Source: Malacoraja senta
Lineage: Eukaryota
Assembly (NCBI GenBank): GCA_038087875.1
Contig: JAXLNO010005136.1
Location: 1-64,000, forward strand
DNA length: 64,000 bases
Direction of reading: 5' to 3'
Shown: piece after piece, positions 15,244 to 64,000 of the stretch
How the letters are laid out: each line of letters opens with the position of its first letter
Position numbering within the stretch: the first letter of the stretch is position 1
The notes under the pieces: model-generated
Seen by the model: the letters and a program-made list of their open reading frames with translations, nothing else
The model's database searches: none
What the model was told of the DNA's origin: nothing
Program-made: the position numbers and the translations under genes

Positions 15244-16217
15244 TGTAAGAAGGAACTGCAGATGCTGGTTTAAACTGAAGATAGACACAAAAAGCTGGAG
15301 TAACTCAGCGGGACAGGCGGCATCTCTGGAGAAAAGGAATGTGTGACGTTTCTGGTCGAGACCCTTCTTCAGACTGGTTAGGGATAAACACATAATCCTC
15401 CGAAATTTCCGCCACCTCCAACGGGATCCCACCGCTAGCCACATTTTCCCATCTCCACCCCTTTCTGCCTTCCGCAGAGACCGTTCCCCTCCGCAACTCC
15501 CTGGTTAACTCATCCCTTCCCACCCAAACTACCCCCTCCCCAGGTACCTTCTCCTGCAACCACAGAAGATGCAACACCTGTCGCTAGTCCTCCTTCCTCG
15601 ACTCTGTCCAGGGACCCCAGCAGTCCTTTCAGGTTAGGCAGAGGTTCACTTGCACCTCCTCCAACCTCATCTGCTGTATCAGTTGTTCAAGATGTGGACT
15701 CCTATTCATCGGCGAGACCAAACGCAGACTGGGCGATCGTTTTGCAGAACACCTTCGCTAAGCCCAGTGAACCAACCTGATCTCCTGGTTGCTGAACACT
15801 TTAATTCTCCTTCCCATTCCTACACAGACCTTTCTGTCCTCGGTCTCCTCCATTGTCACAGTGAGGCTAAATGCAAATTGGAGGAACAGCATCTCATATT
15901 TTGCTTGGGCAGCTTTGATTTCTCTCACTTCAGGTAGCCCTGGCCTTCCCTCTCTCTTTCTATGCCTCCCCCACCCGTCACACTTGCTGCTCATTTTCAC
16001 CCTACAAACAGCTTACGTGGCCTGTTTCCTTTATCATCGTTACTTTTTTGCATATCTTTCATTCATTGTTCATTATCTCTCCACATCACCGTCTATATTT
16101 CCTGTTTCCCTTATCCCTAACAGTCTGAAGAAGGGTCTTGACCCGAAACATCACCCATTCCTTCTCTCCAGAGATGCTGCCTGTCCCGCTGAGTTACTCC
16201 AGCTTTCTGTGTCTATC
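15244..16217. mobile_element. Penelope-like retroelement fragment (GIY-YIG endonuclease remnant) with an inverted 3' segment
   Basis: One + frame reads FTCTSSNLICCISCSRCGLLFIGETKRRLGDRFAEHLR (GIY-YIG-like). Bases 15244-15385 are the reverse complement of the element's 3' end. A 15-bp direct repeat TCCAGTGAGAATATG lies at 15229-15243 and 16218-16232. Confidence 0.85.
16121..16156 (+). ncRNA. Putative minimal hammerhead ribozyme core in the Penelope-like 3' repeat (representative copy)
   Basis: CTGAAGA (16125-16131), an extra A, stem II GGGTC-TT-GACCC, GAAA (16145-16148), then CATC. The family consensus here is CGTC. Confidence 0.55.
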
Positions 16218-26405: not shown

Positions 26406-28311
26406 TATCTAAAATGCGATTGGATAACCTTGCTAATATCCATTAAGTTGATTAATCAAGTCACCTCAGTAGTTCAGTTTGTATCCATATTCTGTAGGTT
26501 ATTTCCCAGAAGAATCACCTTCTAGTTTAATATACAATATGCAGCTTGTTGGGTGCTGAGGTACATCTGCTGTAAGGCTCTGGCTCACTTAAGGCATGAA
26601 GAGTCGATGACTATTATTGCAGCTGTAATTTGAGAATTTACATTTACCAGACGGTGATCTCTTGTATAAAGAGACATTTAACGTCTTTAGTCAAAGACTA
26701 CTGTTGCAGGGAGGGTCCCGATTTTTTTAGATGGTTACTGACCACTTGGATGGAGGTGGATGTCTGAGCCTGTAGTTGACCATGCTTGCTGATGTTTTAT
26801 ATAGTAGTACTACACACCAAATTTGTGCAGGGAGCATTACCTGGAGATTTGTTTAAGAAAGAAGTGCAGATGCTGGAAAAACCTGGAGATTTTGTTATTT
26901 CTCCATTTTGTAAACGGATACATTCTGTAGCTGGAAAATATTTACTAAATCAAATATCCCGTTAATGCAGTAAAGGAGCCGGATTGTCTGAGGAGCCATA
27001 GGTTCTGGTTTTGTTCTCTGAAGGCAGGTGCATGGTACAAAGGTATTATTTGCACCATTGGGTTGTAAGGGTTGAAGTTAGATGTCTGTTTATTGGTATC
27101 ATTGTTCTTACTGATTAACTGCAGTGATCCTTGTATACCAATGCTATGTGAGGAACTGTATAATCGGGAGGTTTTATCCAAGTCCTTTATTAGACATCAC
27201 AGAGAATCATTTCATTGCCTGACTAGTTAAACTGAACCAGTTGTTGTTGATACACATAGGAGAGCTGAGGGAAGCAACACAATAAAACAAGTTTGTATTA
27301 AACAGAGTGATAAAACTCTGGGGAAGTAAGGAAAAATGTTTTTGATATAAGCTGTTATTGATAGGTGTCAAAGGAAAGGCTGGCACAAATCACAGCTGCT
27401 CCACGCAGAAACTGCTTAATGTGACTCAAACATTTTGCTGTAGTATTTATGTGTCATTGTACTTTAATAGGTGCCTATCGGCCATGATTACGTCCCAGTT
27501 TATCTGCTTGTGAGGTGTGGTGGGCAAAAGTGATGAACGCATTTCAGTGTAGAAATCTCCAGATGCCAAATTTTCCTTGTATGCCCATAAATTGCATGAA
27601 CTATACAACAGAACAGTACACCACAAGAACAGTCCCTTCAGCCCACATTGTCTGCGCCAAATATGATGCCAAGACAATCTGCCTTATCTGCCTGCATGTA
27701 ATCCATTTGCCTATGATATGAATAAAAGACAGCTTTAAACATGCAGGGAATGCTCAGCAGTCAATCAGCATCTGAGAAGGTGATTACAGTTGCTGACCAT
27801 TCATCAAAGTTGAATGGTACTAAGATTCAGGCTAGTTGACCAAATGGCTTTGGATTTTGAACCATGCATTTGAAACAGAAACATCTGAGCAACAATTCCA
27901 TTCTGCCCCATCTGCCTGCTTTGCCTCAGTAGGAGTAATCTTTCCTCAGAAAACAGAGCAAACATTTTCAGCATTGTAAACTGCAGAATGGAAGGTTTGA
28001 TCAGTGGAGCTGTTTAACTCTTGTTAGAGCAAGCGATGATTTCTGCTAAGATGCTTCATAATAGTGCTTATAATTGCTTCATAATAACTTGTGCGTTGGT
28101 GAATGAAATGTTTGAATTTTGAAAACCGTATCTTAGGTGGTTAGATTGTGATTTATTTGTCTGATGCTGTTTAAGCATTGTAAAAAATATATATAAATTC
28201 AGTTTCCAAAAAATATTGTTGTGGATATCCTGATCAGTCATTAAACCCAGGATGTGCTGATGTGAATATTACTAATGCCAAGTTCTCTCTCTTTCTCTTT
28301 ATCCCCTGCAG

Positions 28312-28563
28312 CCTCAGTTCACGAACTTGGGGCTCCTCAACAGTATGGAGCAACAAATACCGAACGGATCATCCTCCACCAGCCCCTACAACAACGACCA
28401 CACTCCCAGCATCACAGCACCCTCGCCATATGCTCAGCCCAGCTCCACCTTCGAGGCTCTCTCACCATCACCAGCCATCCCGTCAAACACAGATTACCCA
28501 GGCCCACATGGGTTTGATGTGTCATTCCAGCAGTCCAGCACAGCCAAGTCTGCCACATGGACA
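28312..28563 (+). CDS. TP63: TP63 exon 4 ([15 protein letters not shown]...[12 protein letters not shown]), 252 nt
   Basis: Branch-like ACTAAT at 28271, then a pyrimidine tract and ctgcag| acceptor. Donor is ACA|gtaagt. The translation is typical p63. Confidence 0.98.
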
Positions 28564-29793
28564 GTAAGTTATCTCAACCAACAATTTCCTGGTGCATGCA
28601 CGGAATTTGATGTTCACCATATATATGACAGCTTTAATAGCATCCAACTCAGTGGGTAAGCTTTGGTTTCTAATATTGAAAAATACATCTACCTTGAAGG
28701 TTTGGTCAAGTTTGTGAAATGGGCAAAAAAGGAAAAATGGTGTTTATTATTTTAAGATGATACATTTTGGAAGGTAGGAACAGGGGCTGGGAATAATCAA
28801 TAGAAGAAGCTGATAAGTATGGAGAGACAGAACCATGTGTTTATTTGTTTTACAAGTGTCAGTGCAAGATTCAGATCAGTGCATTGTCATATCCACCAGA
28901 GTGCAATGAGATTCCATGTTCGCAACAACCGATTCCAGCTGAAATTTATAACTTACAAATATTGAAGAGAGAACAAAGAAGGAATGATAAGTTTGAGCAT
29001 AGTCTTGTTTTCCCATACGTGGAGTTTTGAGGTTACCTCCAGCCATGTGTGAGTGGAATGGTAACAGAGTTACATGGGATAATGGTGCTTTCTTACAGTA
29101 GAAGCGGGAAACGGAGTGGCAGTTTCCAAAGCCGAAGCATTTTGCTAATATGAATAGGAAGGATATTCCTGCTTTGGAGAGGGAATAAAAAGGGAAAAAA
29201 ATGTTTATTTGTTTGAGTATTGAGACCTTGCTTTGTTATGTGCGCTCACAGATAGGAACATGGACATTTTCATTACTTTAAAATAGACATTTTAAAATAT
29301 AATGATTTTTATAATGGCATATATTTTTAAATAGGTAATTAGAGCCAGATGTTGAAACGGTGACTATACATTATAAACTCAGTTGGACCTTGTGTAATAA
29401 GCACAACATTATCAGGCCAGCGAGTTCAAACGGAAAGTGCTGAAAACATTCAGCAGGTCAGGCAGCATCAATGGAAAGAGAAACAGTAAATGTTTCCAGT
29501 CACAAACCCTTTGTCAGAACAGTGCAGTTGTTGAGAAATACTTTGATTTTTAACACAGCTAGGTTTCCTTGATTCCAGGGTAAAATGCTACAAACACAGC
29601 ACCCTGTGGAGATGAGAAGAAATGACCCACAACAGATTGCTGATCCTCTTGTGTAGTGAAAGCAATTGACAATAGTTTCACCATTTTTGCAACTACAGTA
29701 ATTCTGCACAAGCAAAAATAATTTTTATTCATCAGAACCCGTGAGCCGTCAAACCACGTGAGAAACATCAATATCAAACAGAACCAGATCAAA

Positions 29794-51512: not shown

Positions 51513-52240
51513 CCATGACGGAAACACTCTACACCTCTACCCCGTCGCACTCACAGACAGAGAACCCTAAGAAAACACCTGCTGCTGTGATGGATTTAGG
51601 TTTTCTGCAATTGAGAGGTGAAGCATTGATTGCATGCACAGGAGACGGGGCAGGTCAACCACGCGATGCTGACAGTGAGTATATCAGTGACTGGGATGCA
51701 GCCTCACTGTCAGGCAACCTCTCCCCTCCACAAGCTTCTGCCGCCACGCACAGCTCGCCGGGAGCTTCTGCCGCTCGTAATGAAACAGTACTACTTCACA
51801 TGAAGAAAGTTGTTCATCCTGTGTCTTTACACCAATCCTTTACTCCTACAGACTCTCTGCTTCCGTACACAAGCTTCCAGCCAAGCTCATCCGTAGCTCG
51901 CAGTGTGGAACCTAAACACATTGATACAGTTATCTGAGCTCCTGGTGAAATTGATTATTGACACTGTATGTGCTTGTTACGTTTCAGCTCAAATACAATG
52001 AAGAATGTAGAACAGTAAACATAGAAACAGACGCTTCGGCCCATAATGTCTGTGCCTATAAGAACTTTGAACAGTGCAATGGAATTTATAAACTCTTGTA
52101 CTTTTTTGAAATATTGTGTACTAATGCAAGCTGGTGTGATTATCGTTTGTGCTCATTCAGCAACAACGTCGGAGATTTGGCGAATGAGCTGCTGTCGGTG
52201 CTTCTCAATGACCCATCCTTGCCGTTCTCCTTTCCTGCAG

Positions 52241-52427
52241 TATTCTCCAGAGCTGAAGAAGCTGTACTGTCAGATTGCCAAGACGTGCCCCATCCAGATC
52301 AAAGTGATGACGCAGCCACCACAAGGAGCTGTGATCCGAGCCATGCCAGTGTACAAGAAGGCGGAACATGTCACGGAGGTGGTGAAACGTTGCCCGAACC
52401 ATGAGCTCAGCAGGGAGTTCAATGATG
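52241..52427 (+). CDS. TP63: TP63 exon 5, DNA-binding domain ([17 protein letters not shown]...[14 protein letters not shown]), 187 nt
   Basis: tttcctgcag| acceptor and G|gtaatg donor. Contains the Zn-ligand CxxH motif (CPNH). Confidence 0.98.
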
Positions 52428-53307
52428 GTAATGCCCTGACCGATTCTTTAAATCAGCTTCTGAGAGGTGTTTGGGAATGTTAGGTCATTCAGAACGGCAC
52501 GCACTAGAATGTCTGGAACTTCCAATCACATCCGTTACTTGCACGTCATGTGGAGACCAGACGATGGAGTGCTACTGCCGAAACACACCACCTCATAGGC
52601 CAAACGTTGGCAATACTCACATAGGGACCGCTGTTCATCCAGTAAGTTCCCTTCTCAATAGGTTCAGTCGCACCAAAGCAAATAGGTCATAGAGTGACTG
52701 CTGTTTCAGAACTTGAGGTGGGGCAGAAAATAGTGAAAGGTTTCCAATTCATGATCAATTTTGATGCCATTGACTCCTTACTATCAGGTCTGCTCTCCAC
52801 ATGGAGTCACACAATTCATTTTGGGGACATTGAGATTGTGACATTACAGGCTGCACGTACGAGCCCACAGTGTTGCGGGTGTAATCATTGGACACTGAGC
52901 AGAAAGTAGTTGATGCTTCGACTTTATGTCCAGACTAACTCAAGTGCTTATGAAGAGTTTCCAATAGCAAATCAGGCTTGACTGTAGCTGCAGCCAGCAT
53001 TTAACCAGTTTGTACAACTACACTGAGGAGCAGCCTTCTGATCCGTTGAATGAACGGAGCATGCTGGCTGCATGCATTGGACCCACTCCTAAGGCTGTTC
53101 TGGCTCTCACCTTAGGCTCTTATTATATCAGGGCAGTTGTAGATTTAATTTTCACAAGCACTGTTTATTGAGGGGAAAATATTAAGGAGGAGCCTTGTGC
53201 CACATAAGAGCTAATGGAGGGCTATAGACTGCGGAATGATGTACATGATGTTAACCAGGTCTGTGTATGTATGGCAGAGTGAAAGGGTATAGGGGTATTT
53301 TAAATGA

Positions 53308-53514
<207 letters not shown>

Positions 53515-53772
53515 TGAAGCAGCCCCACTGCTTGTATGCTGATAGCCAGACTAAGCTGTACATAGTATCGGTGATTATTAACCTTTAGCACCAATTTGAA
53601 TTCGGTTCCAAGAAAAATTGCCAGAGTACGTCAGACAGTTAATCTGCTACAGTCAGTTTTTACCTTGCTGGTAAAGTTTAGAAATGCATTAAAAAAGTAG
53701 CCACGTCAATGGCCCTCACTACGTGGTGTGAGTGGGAAGGCTGTAAAGAGATTGAAGCAGCTTCAGTGTTAG

Positions 53773-53964
<192 letters not shown>

Positions 53965-54576
53965 TAAGTAGATCTACTCCTCCCTTGGCTTGTAAAACCT
54001 CCCCGTAAGAGTTGGCTTTTCCAACTCTCACCTGCGCGCTCCCGATTGCTGATCGTTCCAGCTTGGAACCTCAGCTTCGTGCTTCCCAGTCGTTGTGAGA
54101 GTGCAAGACTGGAAAGGGCAGGTGAGCAAGAGGGGGACTGACAGCACTGTTCTGGGTTTTATTGCTACCTGTCACATTCTCAGTAACACTGCGGAGGTGT
54201 AATAGTGAGTTACCTGCTGACCACAGGCCGGGGGGGGGGGGGGGGAGAGGAGGAGGGTGGCTGATCCTGACAAGCACACCAGGCAGAAGGAGAGCTCCCC
54301 AGGGAGTGCCCTACTCAATGAACGAAGCATTGAAGGAGCTTCTGCCGGCTGTGTGCACTGCTTGTCCTTTACTTTTATAAACCGCAGCAGTGTGCATTCA
54401 TGTTGTGCCTCTAGCTCAGTAAAATATCCCTGGTGCTGGATGTGAGCAACATCAGATACTCCAGGCATCTGTAACCAGAGGTCTTGCCAGTGTCTTGGCT
54501 CCTCTGTACAACCGTTGAATTGTATTTGCTTGGATAGCCTTGTTGTAACGTTCACGTCTCGTTCTCCTGTATCCAG

Positions 54577-54713
54577 TGGCCAGGTGCTAGGACGCCGCTG
54601 CTTTGAAGCCCGTATCTGTGCTTGCCCTGGCCGTGACCGTAAGGCAGATGAGGACAGCATCCGCAAGCAGCAAGTGACCGAAGGAGTAAAGGGCGTTGAC
54701 AGCACCAAGCGGC
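54577..54713 (+). CDS. TP63: TP63 exon 8 ([33 protein letters not shown]...TKR), 137 nt
   Basis: atccag| acceptor and C|gtaagt donor. Contains the ICACPGRDR recognition helix motif. Confidence 0.98.
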
Positions 54714-55193
54714 GTAAGTAAAATTGGATTGTGGAGCATTGGCCTCTCTCTGTCCACAAGAGTCTGCTTCAGGCACAGACCATTGTGTGGACAGGACTGG
54801 GATTCTCTAACCTGTTGTTCAGAGGAGGCTAGTACAGAATATTCTACTCGCCCCCACTCCTTGGGATGGTTCCCTATGGTCAAAACCTTCTGAAAACCCT
54901 GGCTACAGAAATATCGGCTTACTACTGTATACAACTCTACCTGTTGTGAGCACAAGGGGTCAAACTGTCACGTTTATCCTAAGGTTGCACATTTCCTCAG
55001 AGCTGCCCAACTTTGCAGCTGAGAATGTGGCAATTAGGGCAGGGACCATGAACCATGCCCCTCCCCTGCCATAACAGCTGAGGGCTTGATATGACCAATT
55101 AAACTTCCTGAGGAGCTGCAGACAGGTGATACTGATGTGTGTATGTGTGCTGATGGTAGCACTTAGTGAAGCTCCTTGTAATCTCTCTTGCAG

Positions 55194-55276
55194 TCCGTCA
55201 TGTGAACCAGGGCATCCAGGTGGCCTCCATCAGTAAGAAACGGCGGCCAGGAGAAGAGGAGCTCTTCTATTTACCA
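55194..55276 (+). CDS. TP63: TP63 exon 9 (LRHVNQGIQVASISKKRRPGEEELFYLP), 83 nt, NLS and start of oligomerisation domain
   Basis: ctctcttgcag| acceptor and CCA|gtaggt donor. In frame with exons 8 and 10. Contains a KKRR NLS. The ORF track misses it. Confidence 0.95.
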
Positions 55277-55990
55277 GTAGGTTCCAGTTTTTTTACGTCA
55301 TTCTGATCTGTGTATGATCCATTCACCTTAAATCAATCGGACATGCCAAACACTTTCCGAAGAATGTGTGCTGGTTCACTTTTGAAAATGAAAAATAGCA
55401 GTTTTCTCCTGGGATATTCCCAACAATCTTTGTGCTTCCATTTTATCATCGTATTTGTCTTGAGATGTTTTACCTCAACTGAATCAGGCACCAAGCTGTG
55501 TGTTATCAGTAAACGTCAAATGGGTGGTGAGAAAGTCCACAGTCATACAGCCCAGAATCAGGCCCTTCAGCCCACCATGTCTGTGCCGACTGTTTTATTT
55601 ATAGCCTTTTTATATCCATTCTTTTCCAGAATTCTCCAGTTCCAATTGTGTTGCACAAAATCTCCTATATATGTTCTCTAGAGTCTATAGACTCCCTGCC
55701 CCATGGCAGTTGTTGCAACCACTCAGCATGGTGCTTCAGCACTTTTACAGCGTATGTTCTCTACACAGCTCTACTAGTCTACCGTCTGGTCTTTGCCCTC
55801 GGTCACGTTTTGTTGCTGCCCTGAACCCGCTGCTCTGCTGTGGCTGCACCTCTCTGTGCTATTGCTGCCCCTCTCCTCCAGCACCATCCCTGAAACCAAA
55901 CACTTTGATACATTTTGGATGATGAGGCCTGTGTGACTGCCGGTGAACTTTGTTGTCGGAGCTGATCGTTGCATACTTTTTGATTTACAG

Positions 55991-56115
55991 ATAAAAGGAC
56001 GGGACACTTATGAAATGTTGCTGAAAATTAAGGAGTCACTGGAACTGATGCAGCAGTTGCCACAGCACACCATCGAGAGCTACCGGCAGCAGCAGCAACT
56101 TTTGCTGCAGAAACA
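55991..56115 (+). CDS. TP63: TP63 exon 10 ([41 protein letters not shown]), 125 nt, oligomerisation domain
   Basis: tttacag| acceptor and CA|gtaagt donor (phase 2). Encodes the p63/p73 tetramerisation helices. Confidence 0.97.
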
Positions 56116-56203
56116 GTAAGTTATTAGAGCATCACAGCCTCAAAGCTTTATAGAGACTAACAGCTGACAGCAGGCTGCTGCTGGTCATCATAGCAGGCAT
56201 GGG

Positions 56204-57811
56204 TAGTGGCTTGCAAAAGTTTTCATACCCCTTGAGCTTTTCCACATTTTGTCACGTTACAACCACAAACGTAAATGTATTTTATTGGTATTTTATGTGA
56301 TAGACCAACACAAAATGGTGCATAATTGTGAAGTGGAAGGAAAATGATACATGGTTTTCAAATTTTTTTACAAATAAAAAACTGAAAAGTGTCGCGTGCA
56401 AAAGTATTCAGCCCCCCTGAGTCAATACTTTGTAGAACCACCTTTCGCTGCAATTACAGCTGCAAGTCTTTTGGGGTATGTCTCTACCAGCTTTGCACAT
56501 CTAGAGACTTAAATTTTTGCCCATTCTTCTTTGCAAAATAGCTCAGTCAGATTGGATGGAAAGCGTCTGTGAACAGCAATGTTCAAGTCTTGCCAGAGAT
56601 TCTCAATTGGATTTAGGTCTGGACTTTGACTGGGCCATTCTAACACATGAATATGCTTTGATCTAAACCATTCCATTGTAGCTCTGGCTGTATGTTTAGG
56701 GTCATTGTCCTGCTGGAAGGTGAACCTCCGCCCCAGTCTCAAGTCTTTTGCAGACTCTAACAGGTTTTCTTCCAAGATTGCCCTGTATTTGGCTCCATCC
56801 ATCTTCCCATCAACTCTGACCAGCTTCCCTGTCCCTGCTGAAGAAAAGCATCCCCACAGCATGATGCTGCCACCACCATGTTTCACAGTGGGGATGGTGT
56901 GTTCAGGGTGATGTGCAGTGTTATGTTTCCGCCATACATAGTGTTTTGCATTTAGGCCAAAAACTTCAATTTTGGTCTCATCTGACCAGAGCACCTTCCT
57001 CCACATGTTTGCTGTGTCCCCCACATGGCTTGTGGCAAACTGCAAACGGGACTTCTTATGGCTTTTTTTCAACAATGGCTTTCTTCTTGCCACTCTTCCA
57101 TAAAGGCCTGATTTGTGGAGTGCACGACTAATAGTTGTCCTGTGGACAGATTCTCCTACCTGAGCTGTGGATCTCTGCAGCTCCTCCAGAGTCACCATGG
57201 GCCTCTTGGCTGCTTCTCTGATCAATGCTCTCCTTGCCCGGCCTGTCAGTTTAGGTGGACGGCCATGTCTTGGTAGGTTTGCAGTTGTGCCATACTCTTT
57301 CCATTTTCGGATGATGGATTGAACAGTGCTCCGTGAGATGTTCAAAGCTTGGGATATTTGTTTATAACCTAACCCTGCTTTAAACTTCTCCACAACTTTA
57401 TCCCTGACCTGTGTGATGTGTTCCTTGGGCTTCATGATGCTGTTTGTTCACTAATGTTCTCTAACAAACCTCTGAGGCCTTCACAGAACAGCTGTATTTA
57501 TACTGAGATTAGATTACACACAAGTGGACTCTATTTACTAATTAGGTGACTTCTGAAGGCAATTGGTTGCACTGGATTTTATTTAGGGGTATCAGAGTAA
57601 AGGCTGAATACTTTTGCACGTGACACTTTTCAGTTTTTTATTTGTAAAAAGATTTGAAAACCATGTATCATTTTCCTTCCACTTTACAATTATGCGCCAC
57701 TTTGTGTTGGTCTATCACATAAAATCCCAATAAAATACATTTACGTTTGTGGTTGTAACGTGACAAAATGTGGAAAAGTTCAAGGGGTATGAATAGTTTT
57801 GCAAGCCACTG
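56204..57811 (-). mobile_element. Tc1-family (DD34E) IR/DR DNA transposon, Passport/Glan/Eagle-like, full length (~1.6 kb)
   Basis: TIRs of about 210 bp at 56204-56413 and 57602-57811 with about 10 mismatches. Each TIR has outer and inner TGCAAAAGTATTCA-like direct repeats. The right end is CACTG|TA. The left terminus is imperfect (GGGTAGTGG rather than TACAGTGG). Confidence 0.96.
56422..57435 (-). pseudogene. Tc1 transposase with one premature stop (TAA at 56509-56511), 337 codons if read through
   Basis: Paired-like HTH with GRPPK, then WSDETK, QQDNDPKH and SPDLNPIE with D-34-E spacing. After the stop the same frame continues VSRCAKLVETYPKRLAAVIAAKGGSTKY*. Confidence 0.93.
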
Positions 57812-58034
57812 TATATCCATCGTTGGCTCATAACTCAGTTAGTGCCTTAAAACCTCTTGAGAGTTTCTTGCTGAGGCAAATTCACTGAGGCAATCCATTT
57901 CCTACATTCACTGTGGGGATCGGGGACCTCCAGCGTGCAATAGGGCCCATGTAAAATGGGGAGTAACAAGCGGCGGGCACTCAAAGACTGGGCAATGGCG
58001 AGAGGTAAGACCAGAAGAACTGAGAGGCAGAATA

Positions 58035-58275
58035 TTCAAGTCAAGAGTGTTTTATTGTCATATGTTCCAGACAGAATAATGAAATTCAATGCTCCCCAAG
58101 TCTATGTAGTTCAGAGCTTATTTGTAGTGTTTACTAGTCTATTGGTTGTAGGGAAGAAGCTGTTCCTGAACCTGGATGTTACAGTTTTCAGGCTCCTGTA
58201 CGTTCTTCCGGATGGCAGGAGTGAAATGAGACCTGGGTGGTGTGGGTCTCTGATGTTACTCGCTGCTTTCCTGTA
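58035..58275 (-). mobile_element. Rex1/Babar LINE 3' fragment
   Basis: KAASNIRDPHHPG...LLPSGRTYRSLKTVTSRFRNSFFPTT. Confidence 0.8.
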
Positions 58276-58279
58276 GAGG

Positions 58280-58460
58280 CAAAACAACATGTTAGAACTC
58301 AGCAGGTCAGGCAGCATTGTGGAGGGAATGGACAGGCGACAGACATTTCAGACCTGGTCTGAAGAAGCTCCCAACTCAACGTTGCTTGACCCGCTGAGTT
58401 CCTCCAGCACTTTGTGATTTGTTTGAGATTCCAGCATCTGCAGTTTCTTGTGTCTACATA
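58280..58460. mobile_element. Fold-back copy of the Penelope-derived element
   Basis: AACTCAGCAGGTCAGGCAGC...CTGAAGAA...TGACCCGCTGAGTT...CCAGCATCTGCAGTT. Confidence 0.65.
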
Positions 58461-58699
58461 CAGATGCATCTCCTGTCTTGGAAAGGTGGTGGGAATATTT
58501 TGTTTCAATATTCAGAAATTCCTGAACGGTTCGAGTAGCCAGCCCCCACCTACACGGCAGCAGCTTTGTAACTGTGTGAGACGAATGTTTAAAAAGTATA
58601 GGGCATGCCACAATTACAGTTCCTTATCTCAGCACAGAATTAATCCACAGGCACTGGGCCATTACGTTTGGTTATGGGAGATATGGGCCTACTTGTTTC

Positions 58700-58972
58700 A
58701 CTTTAGACTTTAGAGGTATAGCATGGAAAACGGCCCGTCGGTCCACTGAGACGTGCCAACTAGCAATCACCCTGTACACTAGCACTATCCTACACACTAG
58801 GGACAATTTACAGAAGCCAATTCATCTACAAACCTGTACATCTTTGGAGTGTGGGAGAAAACCTACATGGTCACGGGAAGAATGTACAAAAACTGTACAG
58901 ACATTACCAATGGTCAGGATCGAACTCATCTCCAGAGTTGTAAGGCAGCAACTCTACCGTTGTGCCGCCCTA
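58700..58972 (-). mobile_element. V-SINE (HE1-like)
   Basis: Colinear with 33962-34245. Confidence 0.78.
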
Positions 58973-60899
58973 TGTGCAGGAAAGGCCAGAAGGAAGAATA
59001 ATCTTGATTCACAAAAGGAGTTAAGAGGTTCTTCAGTGTATTTGATCATTAGTGTTGAGAGCATCATCGCTTTAAACTCCTAAGGGATTGAAACAACGTG
59101 TTTGGAGAAAGGTCGGCATTCCATGAATTGTTAGTGCTGGAAACAATTAATACTGGCTACCAATTCAGAATTAGGTAATTGTCCAGCTCTCTGTGGAACT
59201 GTAACTTTATCAAGAAGCTGCCCTTTATCAAGCAGAACTCAATAATCTTCATGCAACAAAATCTTGTGGGATGTGGGTTGGTTAGGGGGGGTGTACTAGC
59301 ATTGTCCTTAGTGCGTGGTCATCAAAGCTTCCCCTCCTCTCATTGCCTTTTCCCTAAAGGCTCCTGCAATGCAAGTACAACCGCATTCACTCGAGCTTTT
59401 GAGCAGTTGGCGTTCCTGTGGTTAAAGGAGGCAATTTAAATGGATGAGATTTATCTTTAGAATCATACAATTGTGTCTGTCAAATCTTCACTTGTAAGAT
59501 GACAAAATGCTGCAGTGTGCTGCCGTGAGTGCCTTATCTCCACCATCAAGTGTCTGATTTCCTTTTGTTTACTGGTTTTAGTTGCTGGTTGCTGCTCAGG
59601 CTGTTTCTTCTGTATTGTCACTTTTTCTTTGATCTCTCCTCCATGATCATGACGAGTTGCTGTGTGTGAGAGATTGTTGTCTGCTCCCGTTGAAACACTG
59701 CCACACTGCTTTCTGCAGTGGGTTTGCTGGGGTCTAGAGAGGCTAGTCAGCCACAAGATGCTAACTGACCATTAGCAGGGCTCGTATCCTGGGGCTGTAC
59801 TTGAAACCACAAGTACGCAATCAGAGCACAGGTACAGAAAAATTGTGCAAGGCAGTGCACAGTAGTGTGTCAGTTAGTGTGCAAGGCAGTGTGCAAGTGC
59901 AGCAGATCAAGATCAGTCAACTGCCGCACCCCAACTTCATCTTGTCCCTCTCACTCACCAATCTCCACGGTTAATTATGCTGCTGGTTTCATTCTCAATA
60001 AACAACATGGCCCCTATGCCTACAGGAGAGATGTGCACGGAGGGAACGGGCATTGAATACAGTGCTGCCGGTGTACTTGACGAAAGCCGTGTCTTTCACC
60101 ACAAGGTGCCTGAGGGGGGAAGCGACTTCACTGAGTTGTCTGGTGGAATTTGAGTTGATCTCTTATGCGTGGCAGTTAGTCGAACCAACAGCTACTGCTG
60201 AGGCCTGGCAATTGATCCATGCTGAATCCTGGCCATGTTGTGCCAGTCTCCATCACACGTTCCTCTGAGTTCAGTAAGTGGGGCTCAGCCACACCTGGAG
60301 TCACAGAACTACACAGAACCGAAACAGGCCCAACCCAGCGCAGGGAAAAGCTATTTATTCATATATATGGAACAAGCTACCAGAGGATGCTGTAGACGTG
60401 GGCACAATAGTGACGTATAACGGACAGTTGAACAGTGCATGGTTAGGAAATGATTAGAAGGATATGGACTAAATGCAGGTAAATGTGACAAGCTCTTATA
60501 AAACCTGGTCAGAGGGACAAGTAGGACTGAAGAGCCTGTTACCATGTTCTATGTCTCAACCATGCCAAAGAAATTGCCTAACTGAGCTAGTCGCATTTGC
60601 CTGTGCCTTGGCCCTAGTCCCCTAAACCGTTCTTGTCCATGTCTTTTAAATGCCACAGCCCTCTGTATGGGAATGTTGCCCCTCTCTCTTTAAACCCTTT
60701 AGTTACAGACTGCACTGTCCTGGGGGGGGGGATGGCAATTCTCTATCAATCAAATGGAAGGGGCAAAGATTTACAAGGCTGTTGGCAGGGCTGAGAAATT
60801 GCAGTGAGAAGAGGGAATGTCTGGGTGAGCGATAGTTTCCTTGGAGCAAAGGGACAGTGTGATTTAGTGAAGGATATACAATTATGAGGTGCTCAGACA

Positions 60900-61966
60900 G
60901 GTCTTTCGTCCCAATTCGTCCATGTGGATACTGGACTTTCTAACCAACAGACCCCAGTCTGTTAGGTTAGACAAGCACACCTCTTCAACCCTCACCCTGA
61001 ACACCGGCGTTCCACAGGGCTGTGTGCTGAGCCCCCTCCTCTACTCCCTCTTCACCTACGACTGCACACCTGTACATGGTACTAACACCATCATCAAGTA
61101 CGCAGATGATACAACGGTGATTGGCCTCATCAGCAACAACGATGAGTCGGCCTATAGGGAGGAGGTCCAGCTCCTAGCAGCATGGTGCGCTGACAACAAC
61201 CTGGCCCTTAACTCCAAGAAGACCAAGGAGCTCATTGTAGACTTCAGGAAGTCTAGGGGCGGCATGCACACCCCCATCCACATTAACGGGAGGGAGGTGG
61301 AACGTGTTTCCAGCTTCAGGTTCCTGGGGGTCAACATCTCCGATGACCTCTCTTGGACCAACAATACCTCAACTCTGGTCAAGAAGGCTCACCAGCGTCT
61401 CTTCTTCCTGAGGAGACTAAAGAAGGTCCATCTGTCTCCTCGGATTCTGGTGAACTTCTACCGCTGCACCATCGAGAGCATCCTTACCAACTGCATCACA
61501 GTATGGTATGGCAACTGCTCTGTCTCCGACCGGAAAGCACTGCAGAGGGTGGTGAAAACTGCCCAACGCATCACCGGTTCCTCACTCCCCACCATTGAGT
61601 CTGTCCAAAGCAAGCGTTGTCTGCGAAGGGCGCTCAGCATCGCCAAGGACTGCTCTCACCCCAACCACAGACTGTTTACCCTCCTACCATCCGGGAGGCG
61701 CTACAGGTCTCTCCGTTGCCGGACCAGCAGGTCCAGGAACAGCTTCTTCCCTGCGGCGGTTACACTACTCAACACTGTACCTCGGTGACTGCCAATCACA
61801 CCCCCCCCCCCCGGACACTCCTCCCACCAGGATTTATTAGATTTATTTATTTACTGCTCATATTAATGTCGCTCTTCTAGGGAGATGCTAACTGCATTTT
61901 GTTGTCTCTGTACTGTACACTGCACAATGACAATAAAGTTGAATCTGAATCTGAATCTGAATCTGA
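60900..61966 (+). mobile_element. Rex1/Babar-clade LINE, young 5'-truncated copy with open RT C-terminal frame (to 61788)
   Basis: [13 protein letters not shown] and YADD RT motifs, [13 protein letters not shown], and LPSGRRYRS...SFFP. The 3'UTR has AATAAA at 61932 and a (GAATCT)n tail at 61941-61966. Confidence 0.92.
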
Positions 61967-62759
61967 TGTCAAACAAGATGGCCCATCTAAGCTAGTCCCA
62001 TTTGCCTGCATTTGGCCCACCTTTCCTATCCGTGTACCTGCCCAATGTATCTTAAATGCTATTAAAGTACCTGTCTCAACTACCTCCTTTAGCAATTCAT
62101 TCCATATACCCACTGCCCTCTGAGTGAAAAGGTTGCCCCTCAGGTTTCTATTAGTTCTTGGTTGGCAAAGGGCCAGTATCTATCGTGTTACTTGTTTGAC
62201 TAATATTTATTGCCTTACCCTCATCAATCAATTGATAGTGCATCATAAGTCAGATTCTTCAGCAAAGGCCAAGACAGTTCACTGCCCTGGTTTGTTCTGA
62301 AGGGGCTCAGACATTGTATTTCCTTTTCTCATCTACTTGTGACATTTGCAGGTCCAGGCACACACGCTGATCCAACATGCGGCTAACCTCATCCAATCCT
62401 AGACTCCTCTCAGGGCCCAGCAATGTGATCACCCTGTCACTCCTGATTGGTATCGGGTGAAACCAGGGAGTTTGCAGAGAGTGGTATCAGTGGGTGAAGT
62501 GAGGATTCTACAACTTAAACCCATAACTTCTTGCTGTCCAATACTGTTATCTGGTAGTTTCACTGCACTCAAGAGTTTCTTGAGACTTGGATCCCACATT
62601 CAAAACTGCAAGTAAATCAGCTGGAACTGATACCTGTTCCCAAAGATATCGTCATGGTCATGGATGTGGGCAGGTCTAGGGCTCGGAGGTCCACTCTGTC
62701 GATCCTTATCTATGTTTTCTTTTGTCTCTCTCTTTCTCTCTCCGGTTCCCTCTCTCCAG

Positions 62760-62928
62760 TCTGTTCAAGGCCTGCTTTCAAAATGAACACATGGAGCCAA
62801 ACACTGGCAAAAGGCTGTTGCTGATGGAGAACACGCCCGCTTGCATACAGACAGAGAACAGCTTGCACAACCTCGACAAAGGGGGGTGGAACGAAGCAGC
62901 TCTAGCTCAAACATTCCACTACTTGTAG
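62760..62928 (+). CDS. TP63: TP63 gamma-type alternative terminal exon (exon 10'), HLFKACFQNEHMEP...FHYL*
   Basis: A CU-rich tract of about 45 nt precedes the ccag| acceptor. Phase 2 joins exon 10 CA with T to give His. The first 14 aa align with human gamma HLLSACFRNELVEP (recalled). Confidence 0.85.
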
Positions 62929-64000
62929 AAAGACCATTGTCGGAGAACTGAGCTGGAGTGTTTGGAAGAGACACATTCCACAGCGAGTAACCCAGCTCAA
63001 CTTCACTGATGGGTGATATGTCTGCCTTCCCAGTCTCTACCCAGTTGCTGCTGTCCATCCATCAGCGCTTGTTACCAGTTTCAATGTTCAACATCTGCGG
63101 CTATTTCTGTAGCCCCCTCAACTGGTGTGGAATTGACTTCCGGTCCAGTGAGTGCGTGCCACTTAGTGATTGCTTCTGTAACGAAATGCCAGGTGGTTAT
63201 GGTTCTGGATTAGCAGGGCTGAGGCCACAAGTTCATATCCGTGCAGTCAAACACTACAAGTTGGATACGTCACAGCCTGGCTTTCCTCACTGGTCAGAGA
63301 AGCAGTGTTCTGTAGCAAACTCCCAAATGCCACAGCAAAGGTCACCTGCCACCCAAACTCTCTTAAAGTCTTCAGCATAAACCTGGGCATTGGGCAGCAA
63401 ATGTTACCTTGCCAGTTTTGTTCACACACTAAAGAAAGCCAGTACTTTTAACTAAAGGGTGTGTACTGTTTGTAAGGTTAAGGAATTGGGCGAGTCTTGT
63501 GAAAATATCTCTGGCTGTACTTTCTGAAGCTACCTGAAATGTATCATCCCAACTTGGTGACTTTGCTCACGTGTTTCAGTTGAGGTGGGTTGGAGAGGGA
63601 ACACCCGCTTAGTGTACTTTTCAGCAATGTCCGAGAGACATGTACAATTATGACAACATTAGTGAAGTAGTGGAGTTGCTACATGCTGTGTTTATAAAAT
63701 CTTTGAATCACACAGTTCACAAATGGGTCCTTTGGTCCACCATCTCTATGCTGACCATCTGGTCATCTACACTAATCCCATGTACCCACATTAAGATCAT
63801 ATCTTTCTTCACCTCACCTTAAGTGCCTGACTAGTTCCTCTGGCAGCACATTGCAGGTATCAACCACTCTTAGCGTAAAAGACAGATTATCCCTTGGGTT
63901 GTATTTAGCCCTCCTTTCGCAGTGACTATATTTCCCACTATGTGTTTGAACTCTGGCTCTCTGCCTCACTAGTGGAGCACCGCAACCTTTCACACATACT

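What the first reader, a model, noticed from the sequence alone, without database searches (positions are those of the whole stretch)
62760..62928. p63 gamma terminal exon in an apparent cartilaginous fish, with a conserved N-terminal motif and a longer novel tail
Seen: a strong acceptor in the correct phase, 6.6 kb after exon 10, encodes HLFKACFQNEHMEP plus 42 further residues (56 aa in total). Known (recalled): the human gamma tail starts HLLSACFRNELVEP and is 38 aa long. Inference: the gamma isoform predates the cartilaginous/bony fish split, and only the HLxxACFxNExxEP motif is constrained, pointing to a short functional element that includes a conserved Cys. Automated annotation easily misses this exon.
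Basis: partly seen in the sequence, partly recalled or inferred. Interest (0 to 1): 0.75.

Follow-up and report, generated by a model that had tools for sequence, protein, structure and literature searches.

The report
Skate TP63 gamma terminal exon
This is the skate version of the alternative last exon that makes the short "gamma" form of the p63 transcription factor; it is real and transcribed, which pushes a known isoform back to the ancestor of jawed vertebrates but adds no new kind of feature.

Summary
TP63 exon 10 ends at 56115 (CA|gt, phase 2). A very strong acceptor (AG 62758-62759) opens an exon at 62760 that reads His + LFKACFQNEHMEP + 42 residues, with TAG at 62926-62928 (56 aa).

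- **More than chance:** of 4,297 AG sites on this strand, this one alone matches the frog and bird gamma-tail starts (score 45/33, next best 17/16).
- **Orthology:** blastn against two bird TP63 loci finds only exon 10 and the gamma acceptor/exon start, in the same order.
- **Transcription:** RNA-assembly contigs from two related skate species begin exactly at 62760, each with a 30-letter overhang that does not match the intron. One runs 1.66 kb past the window, so the exon is at least 2.9 kb and 62928 is only the CDS end. The overhang letters were not shown, so exon 10 as donor is inferred.

The gamma exon is published for human, mouse, Xenopus and zebrafish, and is annotated in sparrow and bullfrog, so this is a new member of a known kind. 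The motif needs trimming: only L..ACF..E is invariant. Whether it is a peptide element (AlphaFold2 extends tetramerisation helix H2 through it in the bird) or a splice-site constraint is open. The scan held no earlier TP63 note.

The parts
55991..56115 (+). TP63 exon 10 (tetramerisation domain helices H1/H2), ending in phase 2 (CA|)
   Evidence: PDB search: p63 tetramerisation domain 59.9 bits, p73 46.7. blastn to the bird exon 10: 83% over 100 nt.
56116..62759 (+). Intron between exon 10 and the gamma exon (6,644 nt), with donor GTAAGT at 56116-56121. It holds a Tc1-like transposon and other repeats.
   Evidence: for the donor. for the transposon note at 56204-57811. for very high repeat depth at 61001-62200.
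62700..62759 (+). Polypyrimidine tract and 3' splice site of the gamma exon. It is rich in UCU/CUCUCU (PTBP1-type) motifs, and a GGTTCC at 62744-62749 lies 10 nt before the AG, as in birds.
   Evidence: 44 of 50 pyrimidines; 11 UCU in 60 nt, the highest of the sampled 60-nt windows; blastn block 62729-62795 to the bird loci, E=5e-4.
62760..62799 (+). Start of the gamma tail, H-LFKACFQNEHMEP, the only part that aligns with tetrapod gamma tails
   Evidence: 8 of 13 residues are identical to bullfrog P0022; L, A, C, F and E are invariant in skate, frog and birds.
62760..62928 (+). Coding part of the gamma exon (56 codons including the split His, plus TAG)
   Evidence: The ORF is kept in a related skate (P0001/L001) and in the RNA contigs of organisms A and B, which show three substitutions and no indels in the coding part.
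62929..64000 (+). 3' UTR of the gamma exon, continuing beyond the window
   Evidence: the X3 contig (2,931 nt) covers 62760-64000 and runs on for 1,663 nt; no AATAAA or ATTAAA on the + strand after 62066.

Best explanation
This is the orthologue, in a skate, of the TP63 gamma-specific alternative 3'-terminal exon (exon 10' in mouse work, 'exon 12' in GTEx numbering). After exon 10 the pre-mRNA has two fates. It can be spliced to exon 11, giving the alpha, beta and delta forms with the SAM and inhibitory domains. Or it can be spliced to the acceptor at 62760 and cleaved and polyadenylated inside the intron. The second route gives p63-gamma: DNA-binding and tetramerisation domains followed by a 56-residue tail instead of the SAM/TID region. 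Shown here: the in-phase exon, its similarity and collinearity with tetrapod gamma exons, and use of the acceptor in RNA of related skates. Inferred: that exon 10 is the donor; that the exon ends in a poly(A) site beyond the window; that the UCU-rich tract lets PTBP1 repress the exon as in human and Xenopus; and that the conserved first 11 or so residues continue tetramerisation-domain helix H2.
For: Gene identity: exon 10 and the exon-5 region match p63 better than p73 or p53 in the PDB (59.9 vs 46.7 bits; 131 vs 117 vs 81 bits). Phase and ORF. Motif: the anchored score is unique among 4,297 AG sites and was reached by none of 300 shuffles for the frog motif; pairwise BLASTP to the frog tail gives E=3e-5. 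Synteny: in sparrow and bullfrog the gamma exon lies between the tetramerisation exon and a SAM-domain gene model. In 8 kb of skate DNA against bird loci, only exon 10 and the gamma acceptor/exon start align, in the same order. RNA: contigs in X1, X2 and X3 (two related species) start exactly at 62760 with 30 unaligned letters, which is k-1 for 31-mer contigs. Depth is zero over 62201-62700 and no listed contig lies upstream of 62760, and the contigs run at least 2.9 kb downstream. The same runs hold exon 10 words. Structure: AlphaFold2 on the bird exon 9-10-gamma fragment gives one helix over residues 43-74 across the junction at 63/64, with pLDDT about 89 up to residue 70. Regulation: PTBP1 binds the UCU/UCUU tract at the gamma 3' splice site in human, and the control is conserved in Xenopus (PMC10035508).
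Against: The 30 overhang letters were not displayed, so the donor exon is not shown directly. The RNA evidence comes from relatives about 3% diverged, not from the window's own species. A polyA RNA run of another relative (X12) had no reads on the exon. The tool labels X2 and X3 'RNA? (probably DNA)' and warns that holes in depth prove nothing. No poly(A) site lies in the window. The skate tail folded alone is low-confidence and mostly disordered (pLDDT 49). The skates available are too close for a selection test (3 non-synonymous and 2 synonymous changes in all).
Confidence: 0.88

Rival explanations
1. The exon is the gamma exon, but the conserved 'motif' is not a peptide element. On this view the first 36 nt are conserved because they belong to the RNA signals that define and regulate the 3' splice site (U2AF/PTBP1 and exonic enhancers). 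What matters for the gamma protein is only the loss of the SAM and inhibitory domains.
For: The blastn block with birds runs from -31 to +36 across the splice site, so it includes intron. PMC10035508 shows PTBP1 sites intermingled with the gamma 3' splice site, and concludes from 15/37 identity between human and Xenopus that the peptide is unlikely to have a conserved function. The distal tail differs completely in length, sequence and charge.
Against: Two of the five conserved residues that have more than one codon use different codons in skate and bird (L: CTG/CTC; F: TTT/TTC), so the conservation is not purely at nucleotide level. The invariant residues L, A, C, F and E fall on an amphipathic pattern, and AlphaFold2 extends helix H2 through them in the bird.
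Confidence: 0.4
2. A chance open frame behind a pyrimidine-rich AG, not used as a TP63 exon in this species.
For: An open frame of 55 codons alone is unremarkable. The un-anchored tblastn is only E=0.03. No RNA of the window's own species was laid.
Against: The anchored score is unique. DNA conservation with birds is collinear. RNA contigs of two related species start exactly at 62760.
Confidence: 0.03
3. The transcribed unit starting at 62760 is spliced to some other upstream exon, or belongs to a separate transcript in intron 10, and is not joined to exon 10.
For: The overhang letters were not displayed. Intron 10 carries expressed repeats just upstream at 61001-62200.
Against: The phase fits exon 10 exactly and gives the same His codon split as in birds (CA|T). 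The overhang is exactly k-1 letters in three runs, as expected at a graph branch where a shared exon has two downstream partners. Exon 10 is present in the same runs. Sparrow and bullfrog gene models join exon 10 to the gamma exon.
Confidence: 0.05

Closest known systems
Human and mouse TP63 gamma exon (exon 10'; 'exon 12' in GTEx numbering; E11a)
   Same: It is an alternative terminal exon inside the intron after the tetramerisation-domain exon. It has its own 3' UTR and removes the SAM and inhibitory domains (PMC11802870, PMC5667965, PMC10035508, PMC8316356).
   Different: The mammalian tail is 38 aa (PMC11802870) against 56 aa here. The distal sequence is unrelated, the skate tail has net charge -2, and the skate exon is at least 2.9 kb.
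Bullfrog and Xenopus tp63 gamma (P0022; PMC10035508)
   Same: 8 of 13 residues after the junction are identical (LLTACFRNELMDP vs LFKACFQNEHMEP), including the Pro at position 14 of the tail. The exon lies between exon 10 and the SAM exons. PTBP1 represses gamma in Xenopus.
   Different: The first residue is Q, not H. The tail is 38 aa ending in YP, and the distal parts do not align.
Bird TP63 gamma exon (P0015 song sparrow; loci L002 and L005)
   Same: Same CA|T His split. The DNA block from -31 to +36 is conserved, including GGTTCC 10 nt before the AG. The exon lies 4.2-4.6 kb after exon 10, against 6.6 kb in the skate.
   Different: S replaces N and P in the motif, and the tail is 38 aa.
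Zebrafish p63 gamma (constructs in PMC3886889, from Bakkers et al. 2002)
   Same: A gamma C-terminal isoform exists in a ray-finned fish.
   Different: By the cloning primers its tail ends ...KKSSQSV, unlike skate (...FHYL) or tetrapods (...YP). I could not obtain its start or its genomic position.
p73-gamma and p53-beta/gamma
   Same: They are C-terminally altered isoforms of paralogues.
   Different: By established knowledge they arise differently: p73-gamma by exon 11 skipping with a frame change, and p53-beta/gamma by an alternative exon in intron 9. There is no sequence relation, so they are not the same feature.

Membership tests
TP63 gene (rather than TP73 or TP53) | DNA-binding and tetramerisation exons closest to p63 | tested here: met
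   p63 tetramerisation domain 59.9 bits, p73 46.7, p53 24.9; p63 131 bits, p73 117, p53 81; exons 4, 5, 7, 8 and 10 located in the window.
TP63 gamma alternative terminal exon | Lies in the intron after the tetramerisation-domain exon 10 and before exon 11 | tested here: inconclusive
   It is 6,644 nt downstream of exon 10. Exon 11 is outside the window. In sparrow and bullfrog the homologous exon sits between exon 10 and a SAM-domain gene model.
TP63 gamma alternative terminal exon | Acceptor in the phase that completes the split CA| codon, followed by a short ORF and a stop | tested here: met
   CA|T gives His, 56 aa, TAG at 62926-62928. The bird loci have the same CA|T split.
TP63 gamma alternative terminal exon | Tail starts with the L[LF]xACFxxE motif | tested here: met
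   The anchored score is unique among 4,297 AG sites.
TP63 gamma alternative terminal exon | Spliced to exon 10 in mRNA | tested here: inconclusive
   Acceptor use is shown by contigs of three RNA assemblies starting at 62760 with a 30-letter overhang, and exon 10 is in the same runs. The overhang letters were not displayed, and the runs are from related species.
TP63 gamma alternative terminal exon | Terminal exon with its own cleavage and polyadenylation site | tested here: inconclusive
   A contig collinear with the genome runs for 2,901 nt from 62760 with no downstream joint. The poly(A) site must lie beyond 64000, as there is no AWTAAA after 62066 on the + strand.
PTBP1-repressed terminal exon (PMC10035508) | UCU/UCUU/CUCUCU clusters at the 3' splice site that bind PTBP1 | not testable with these tools
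   The motifs are present: 11 UCU, 4 CUCUCU and 2 UCUU in 60 nt, the densest of the sampled 60-nt windows. Binding and repression need experiments.

The most novel reading that the evidence does not exclude
The first 11-13 residues of the gamma tail (L[LF]xACFxxE[LH]M) are a gnathostome-wide, roughly 450-million-year-old extension of tetramerisation-domain helix H2, with an invariant Cys. On this reading they give p63-gamma a property of its own, such as tetramer stability, a partner site or redox sensitivity. That would go against the published view that the gamma peptide has no conserved function and that gamma acts only through what it lacks.
Probability: 0.3. Interest if true: 0.55.

Novelty: new member of a known kind. 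Interest (0 to 1): 0.3.

Why it matters
p63-gamma is the main TP63 form in human skeletal muscle (PMC8316356). Mice lacking exon 10' are tumour-prone (PMC11802870), yet the 38 gamma-specific residues have 'unknown activities'. A skate orthologue moves the gamma exon, and probably its pyrimidine-tract regulation, back to the jawed-vertebrate ancestor. It also narrows the conserved part of the tail to about a dozen residues directly after helix H2, which gives a small, testable target for mutagenesis. As a genomic feature it is ordinary: an expected orthologue of a published exon.

Tried and rejected
- **Protein searches with the 55-aa tail.** The 1.84-billion-protein representative search and the word-indexed search both found only P0001, an unspliced genomic ORF of a related skate. 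Full-length gamma isoforms were out of reach because of the length window and because a spliced query has no reference, so I did not type one.
- **ESM Atlas**: no meaningful hit.
- **Literal searches for the recalled human tail in papers**: nothing. The human sequence therefore stays a recollection, and bird and frog tails from tool output were used instead.
- **Un-anchored tblastn of frog and bird tails on the window**: only E=0.03 for the frog tail, tied with a chance hit. It was replaced by the anchored test (the first script, timed out).
- **Teleost test:** L003 and L004 hold only 1-2 kb after exon 10 and show no motif. The ENA teleost contig and the bullfrog contig came without DNA.
- **AlphaFold2 on the skate tail alone**: pLDDT 49, not usable.
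- **PolyA RNA run X12:** no reads on the exon, so uninformative.
- **Selection test among skates:** only five substitutions, so no power.
- **Readings rejected:** TP73 or TP53 as the gene and a chance ORF. A repeat-derived exon is unlikely: depth over the exon is 5-16, against hundreds to thousands on the repeats upstream.

Full report
**What is there.** Exon 10 of a p53-family gene lies at 55991-56115 and ends ...CAG AAA CA|gtaagt. At 62758-62759 an AG follows a long pyrimidine run, and the exon starts at 62760. CA+T gives His. The frame then reads LFKACFQNEHMEP and 42 more residues, up to TAG at 62926-62928. There are no Ns in the window.

**Which gene.** Against solved structures, the exon 10 peptide matches the p63 tetramerisation domain at 59.9 bits, p73 at 46.7 and p53 at 24.9. 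The exon-5 region matches the p63 DNA-binding domain at 131 bits, p73 at 117 and p53 at 81. Motif scanning places exons 4, 5, 7, 8 and 10 at about 28.3-28.7, 52.0-52.5, 53.8-54.0, 54.4-54.7 and 55.9-56.1 kb. The gene is TP63. An earlier scan note calls this genome a skate (s1-140196); I did not test that.

**Is the match more than chance?** A 55-codon open frame is not remarkable in itself. An un-anchored tblastn of the frog tail on the window gives only E=0.03 and ties with a chance hit. The real test is anchored: the motif must start directly after an AG, in the phase left by exon 10.
- Of 4,297 AG sites on the + strand, site 62761 scores 45 against the frog start and 33 against the bird start. 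The next best sites score 17 and 16.
- None of 300 shuffled windows reached 45 for the frog motif. For the bird motif the highest shuffle score (44) exceeded the observed 33.
- Pairwise BLASTP against the frog tail gives 8/14 identities, E=3e-5.
- The acceptor has 44 of 50 pyrimidines upstream. Its last 60 nt hold 11 UCU, the highest count of any sampled 60-nt window, against a mean of 1.18.

**Comparators obtained with tools.** The protein database did return two annotated fragments that join exons 9, 10 and gamma:
- P0015, song sparrow, with tail HLLSACFRSELMDSRRDPPKQTDAILKHSSPPNPSVYP.
- P0022, bullfrog, with tail QLLTACFRNELMDPRADLLKDKDSFPKYSTFSHLPMYP.

Both tails are 38 aa, the length PMC11802870 gives for TAp63-gamma. 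In both genomes the gamma exon lies between exon 10 and a separate gene model carrying the SAM domain. The alignment leaves L1, A4, C5, F6 and E9 invariant, plus a Tyr at the second-to-last position. H (Q in frog), N (S in birds) and P (S in birds) are not invariant. Beyond residue 13 or so nothing aligns. The skate tail has net charge -2.

**DNA-level orthology.** I ran blastn of skate 56000-64000 against the sparrow locus L002 and a second bird contig, L005. Only two matches fall below E=0.01, and they are collinear:
- exon 10, at 83% over 100 nt;
- skate 62729-62795 against the bird gamma acceptor and exon start, at 73.5% over 68 nt, E=5e-4.

The second block spans the splice site. A GGTTCC sits 10 nt before the AG in both lineages.

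**Transcription.** Contigs of three public RNA assemblies were laid on 61001-64000: X1 from organism A, and X2 and X3 from organism B. They differ from the window by about 3%, so they come from related skates.
- In each run one contig begins exactly at 62760 and carries 30 further letters that do not lie on the intron (records 7, 15 and 24).
- Thirty is k-1 for 31-mer contigs. That is what a contig looks like when it starts at a branch where one upstream exon has two downstream partners.
- Depth is zero over 62201-62700, and no listed contig lies upstream of 62760. In the genomic contig L001 of a relative, the intron next to the acceptor is about 97% identical, so an unspliced overhang would have aligned.
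- The X3 contig covers 62760-64000 and runs on for 1,663 nt. The exon is therefore at least 2.9 kb and mostly 3' UTR. No AATAAA or ATTAAA lies on the + strand after 62066.
- The same runs hold exon 10 words.

There are limits. The tool labels X2 and X3 'probably DNA' and warns that holes prove nothing. A polyA run of another relative (X12) had no reads on the exon. Other RNA runs hold exon 10 but not the gamma exon, which would fit tissue-specific use as in mammals (PMC8316356).

**Conservation within skates.** P0001/L001 keeps the frame and the stop, with L21V, L55M and one synonymous change. Organisms A and B show two synonymous changes and H53Q. That is five changes in all, none in the first 14 codons. 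The species are too close for this to mean anything.

**How it probably works.**
- *Established for other species:* gamma is made when exon 10 is spliced to an internal terminal exon with its own 3' UTR (PMC5667965, PMC10035508). The product lacks the SAM and inhibitory domains. PTBP1 binds UCU/UCUU motifs at the gamma 3' splice site and at the cleavage site and represses the exon in human cells and Xenopus embryos (PMC10035508).
- *Inferred for the skate:* the UCU-dense tract suggests the same control.
- *The peptide:* helix H2 of the p63/p73 tetramerisation domain runs from the LP cap through YRQ and the glutamines (PMC4155161), so it reaches the end of exon 10. AlphaFold2 on the sparrow fragment, with a shallow alignment, gives one helix over residues 43-74 across the junction at 63/64. 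Mean pLDDT is 89 for residues 61-70 and 55 for 71-80. The conserved start of the tail may therefore lengthen H2 by about three turns. The skate tail folded alone is not informative (pLDDT 49).
- *The rival:* the block may be conserved for splice-site definition. Two of the five conserved residues with codon choice use different codons in skate and bird. That leans slightly towards protein-level constraint, but the numbers are far too small to decide.

**Novelty.** The gamma exon is published for human, mouse, Xenopus and zebrafish (PMC11802870, PMC10035508, PMC3886889), and automated annotation captured it in sparrow and bullfrog. I found no paper on p63 isoforms in cartilaginous fish, and lamprey work reported no gamma-like form (PMC4743058). 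I could not check RefSeq models of skates and sharks. This is an expected orthologue in a further lineage. Its modest added value is to date the exon to the jawed-vertebrate ancestor and to narrow the conserved part of the tail to about a dozen residues.

Noticed in passing
window 61001-62200: Interspersed repeats in intron 10 show very high contig depth in all three RNA assemblies (hundreds to thousands). They also show 20-100 reads per 100-nt bin in the polyA run X12, on both strands. Many loose ends fall at 61985, 62019 and 62116, which look like element boundaries.
   Followed up: no
window 56204-57811: An earlier scan note (s1-207041) places a near-intact Tc1-like transposon here, which is inside the intron between exon 10 and the gamma exon. 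It accounts for about 1.6 kb of the 6.6-kb spacing, against 4.2-4.6 kb in birds.
   Followed up: no
window 62744-62749; L002 about 15287-15292: A GGTTCC interrupts the polypyrimidine tract exactly 10 nt before the gamma acceptor AG in both skate and birds. It may be a conserved splicing-regulatory or branch-region element.
   Followed up: partly
window 62929-63157: About 230 nt of the 3' UTR directly after the stop codon are 100% identical between the window and the related skate contig L001, while the sequence further downstream differs at 2-3%. With so little divergence this may be chance.
   Followed up: no
window 28276-28656 and 52025-56115: TP63 exon 4 lies about 24 kb upstream of exon 5, while exons 5-10 are packed into about 4 kb.
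   Followed up: partly
L005 (JGI metagenome 3300005287, contig Ga0065711_1033158): This 'metagenome' contig is bird genomic DNA carrying TP63 exon 10 and the gamma exon. Its tail is identical to the song sparrow's, so it is host or environmental DNA in a metagenome.
   Followed up: partly
P0020, P0023, P0024, P0031, P0032: Database 'proteins' that read from exon 10 straight into the intron (…LLQKQWV…) are gene-caller artefacts on genomic or unspliced contigs, not isoforms.
   Followed up: no
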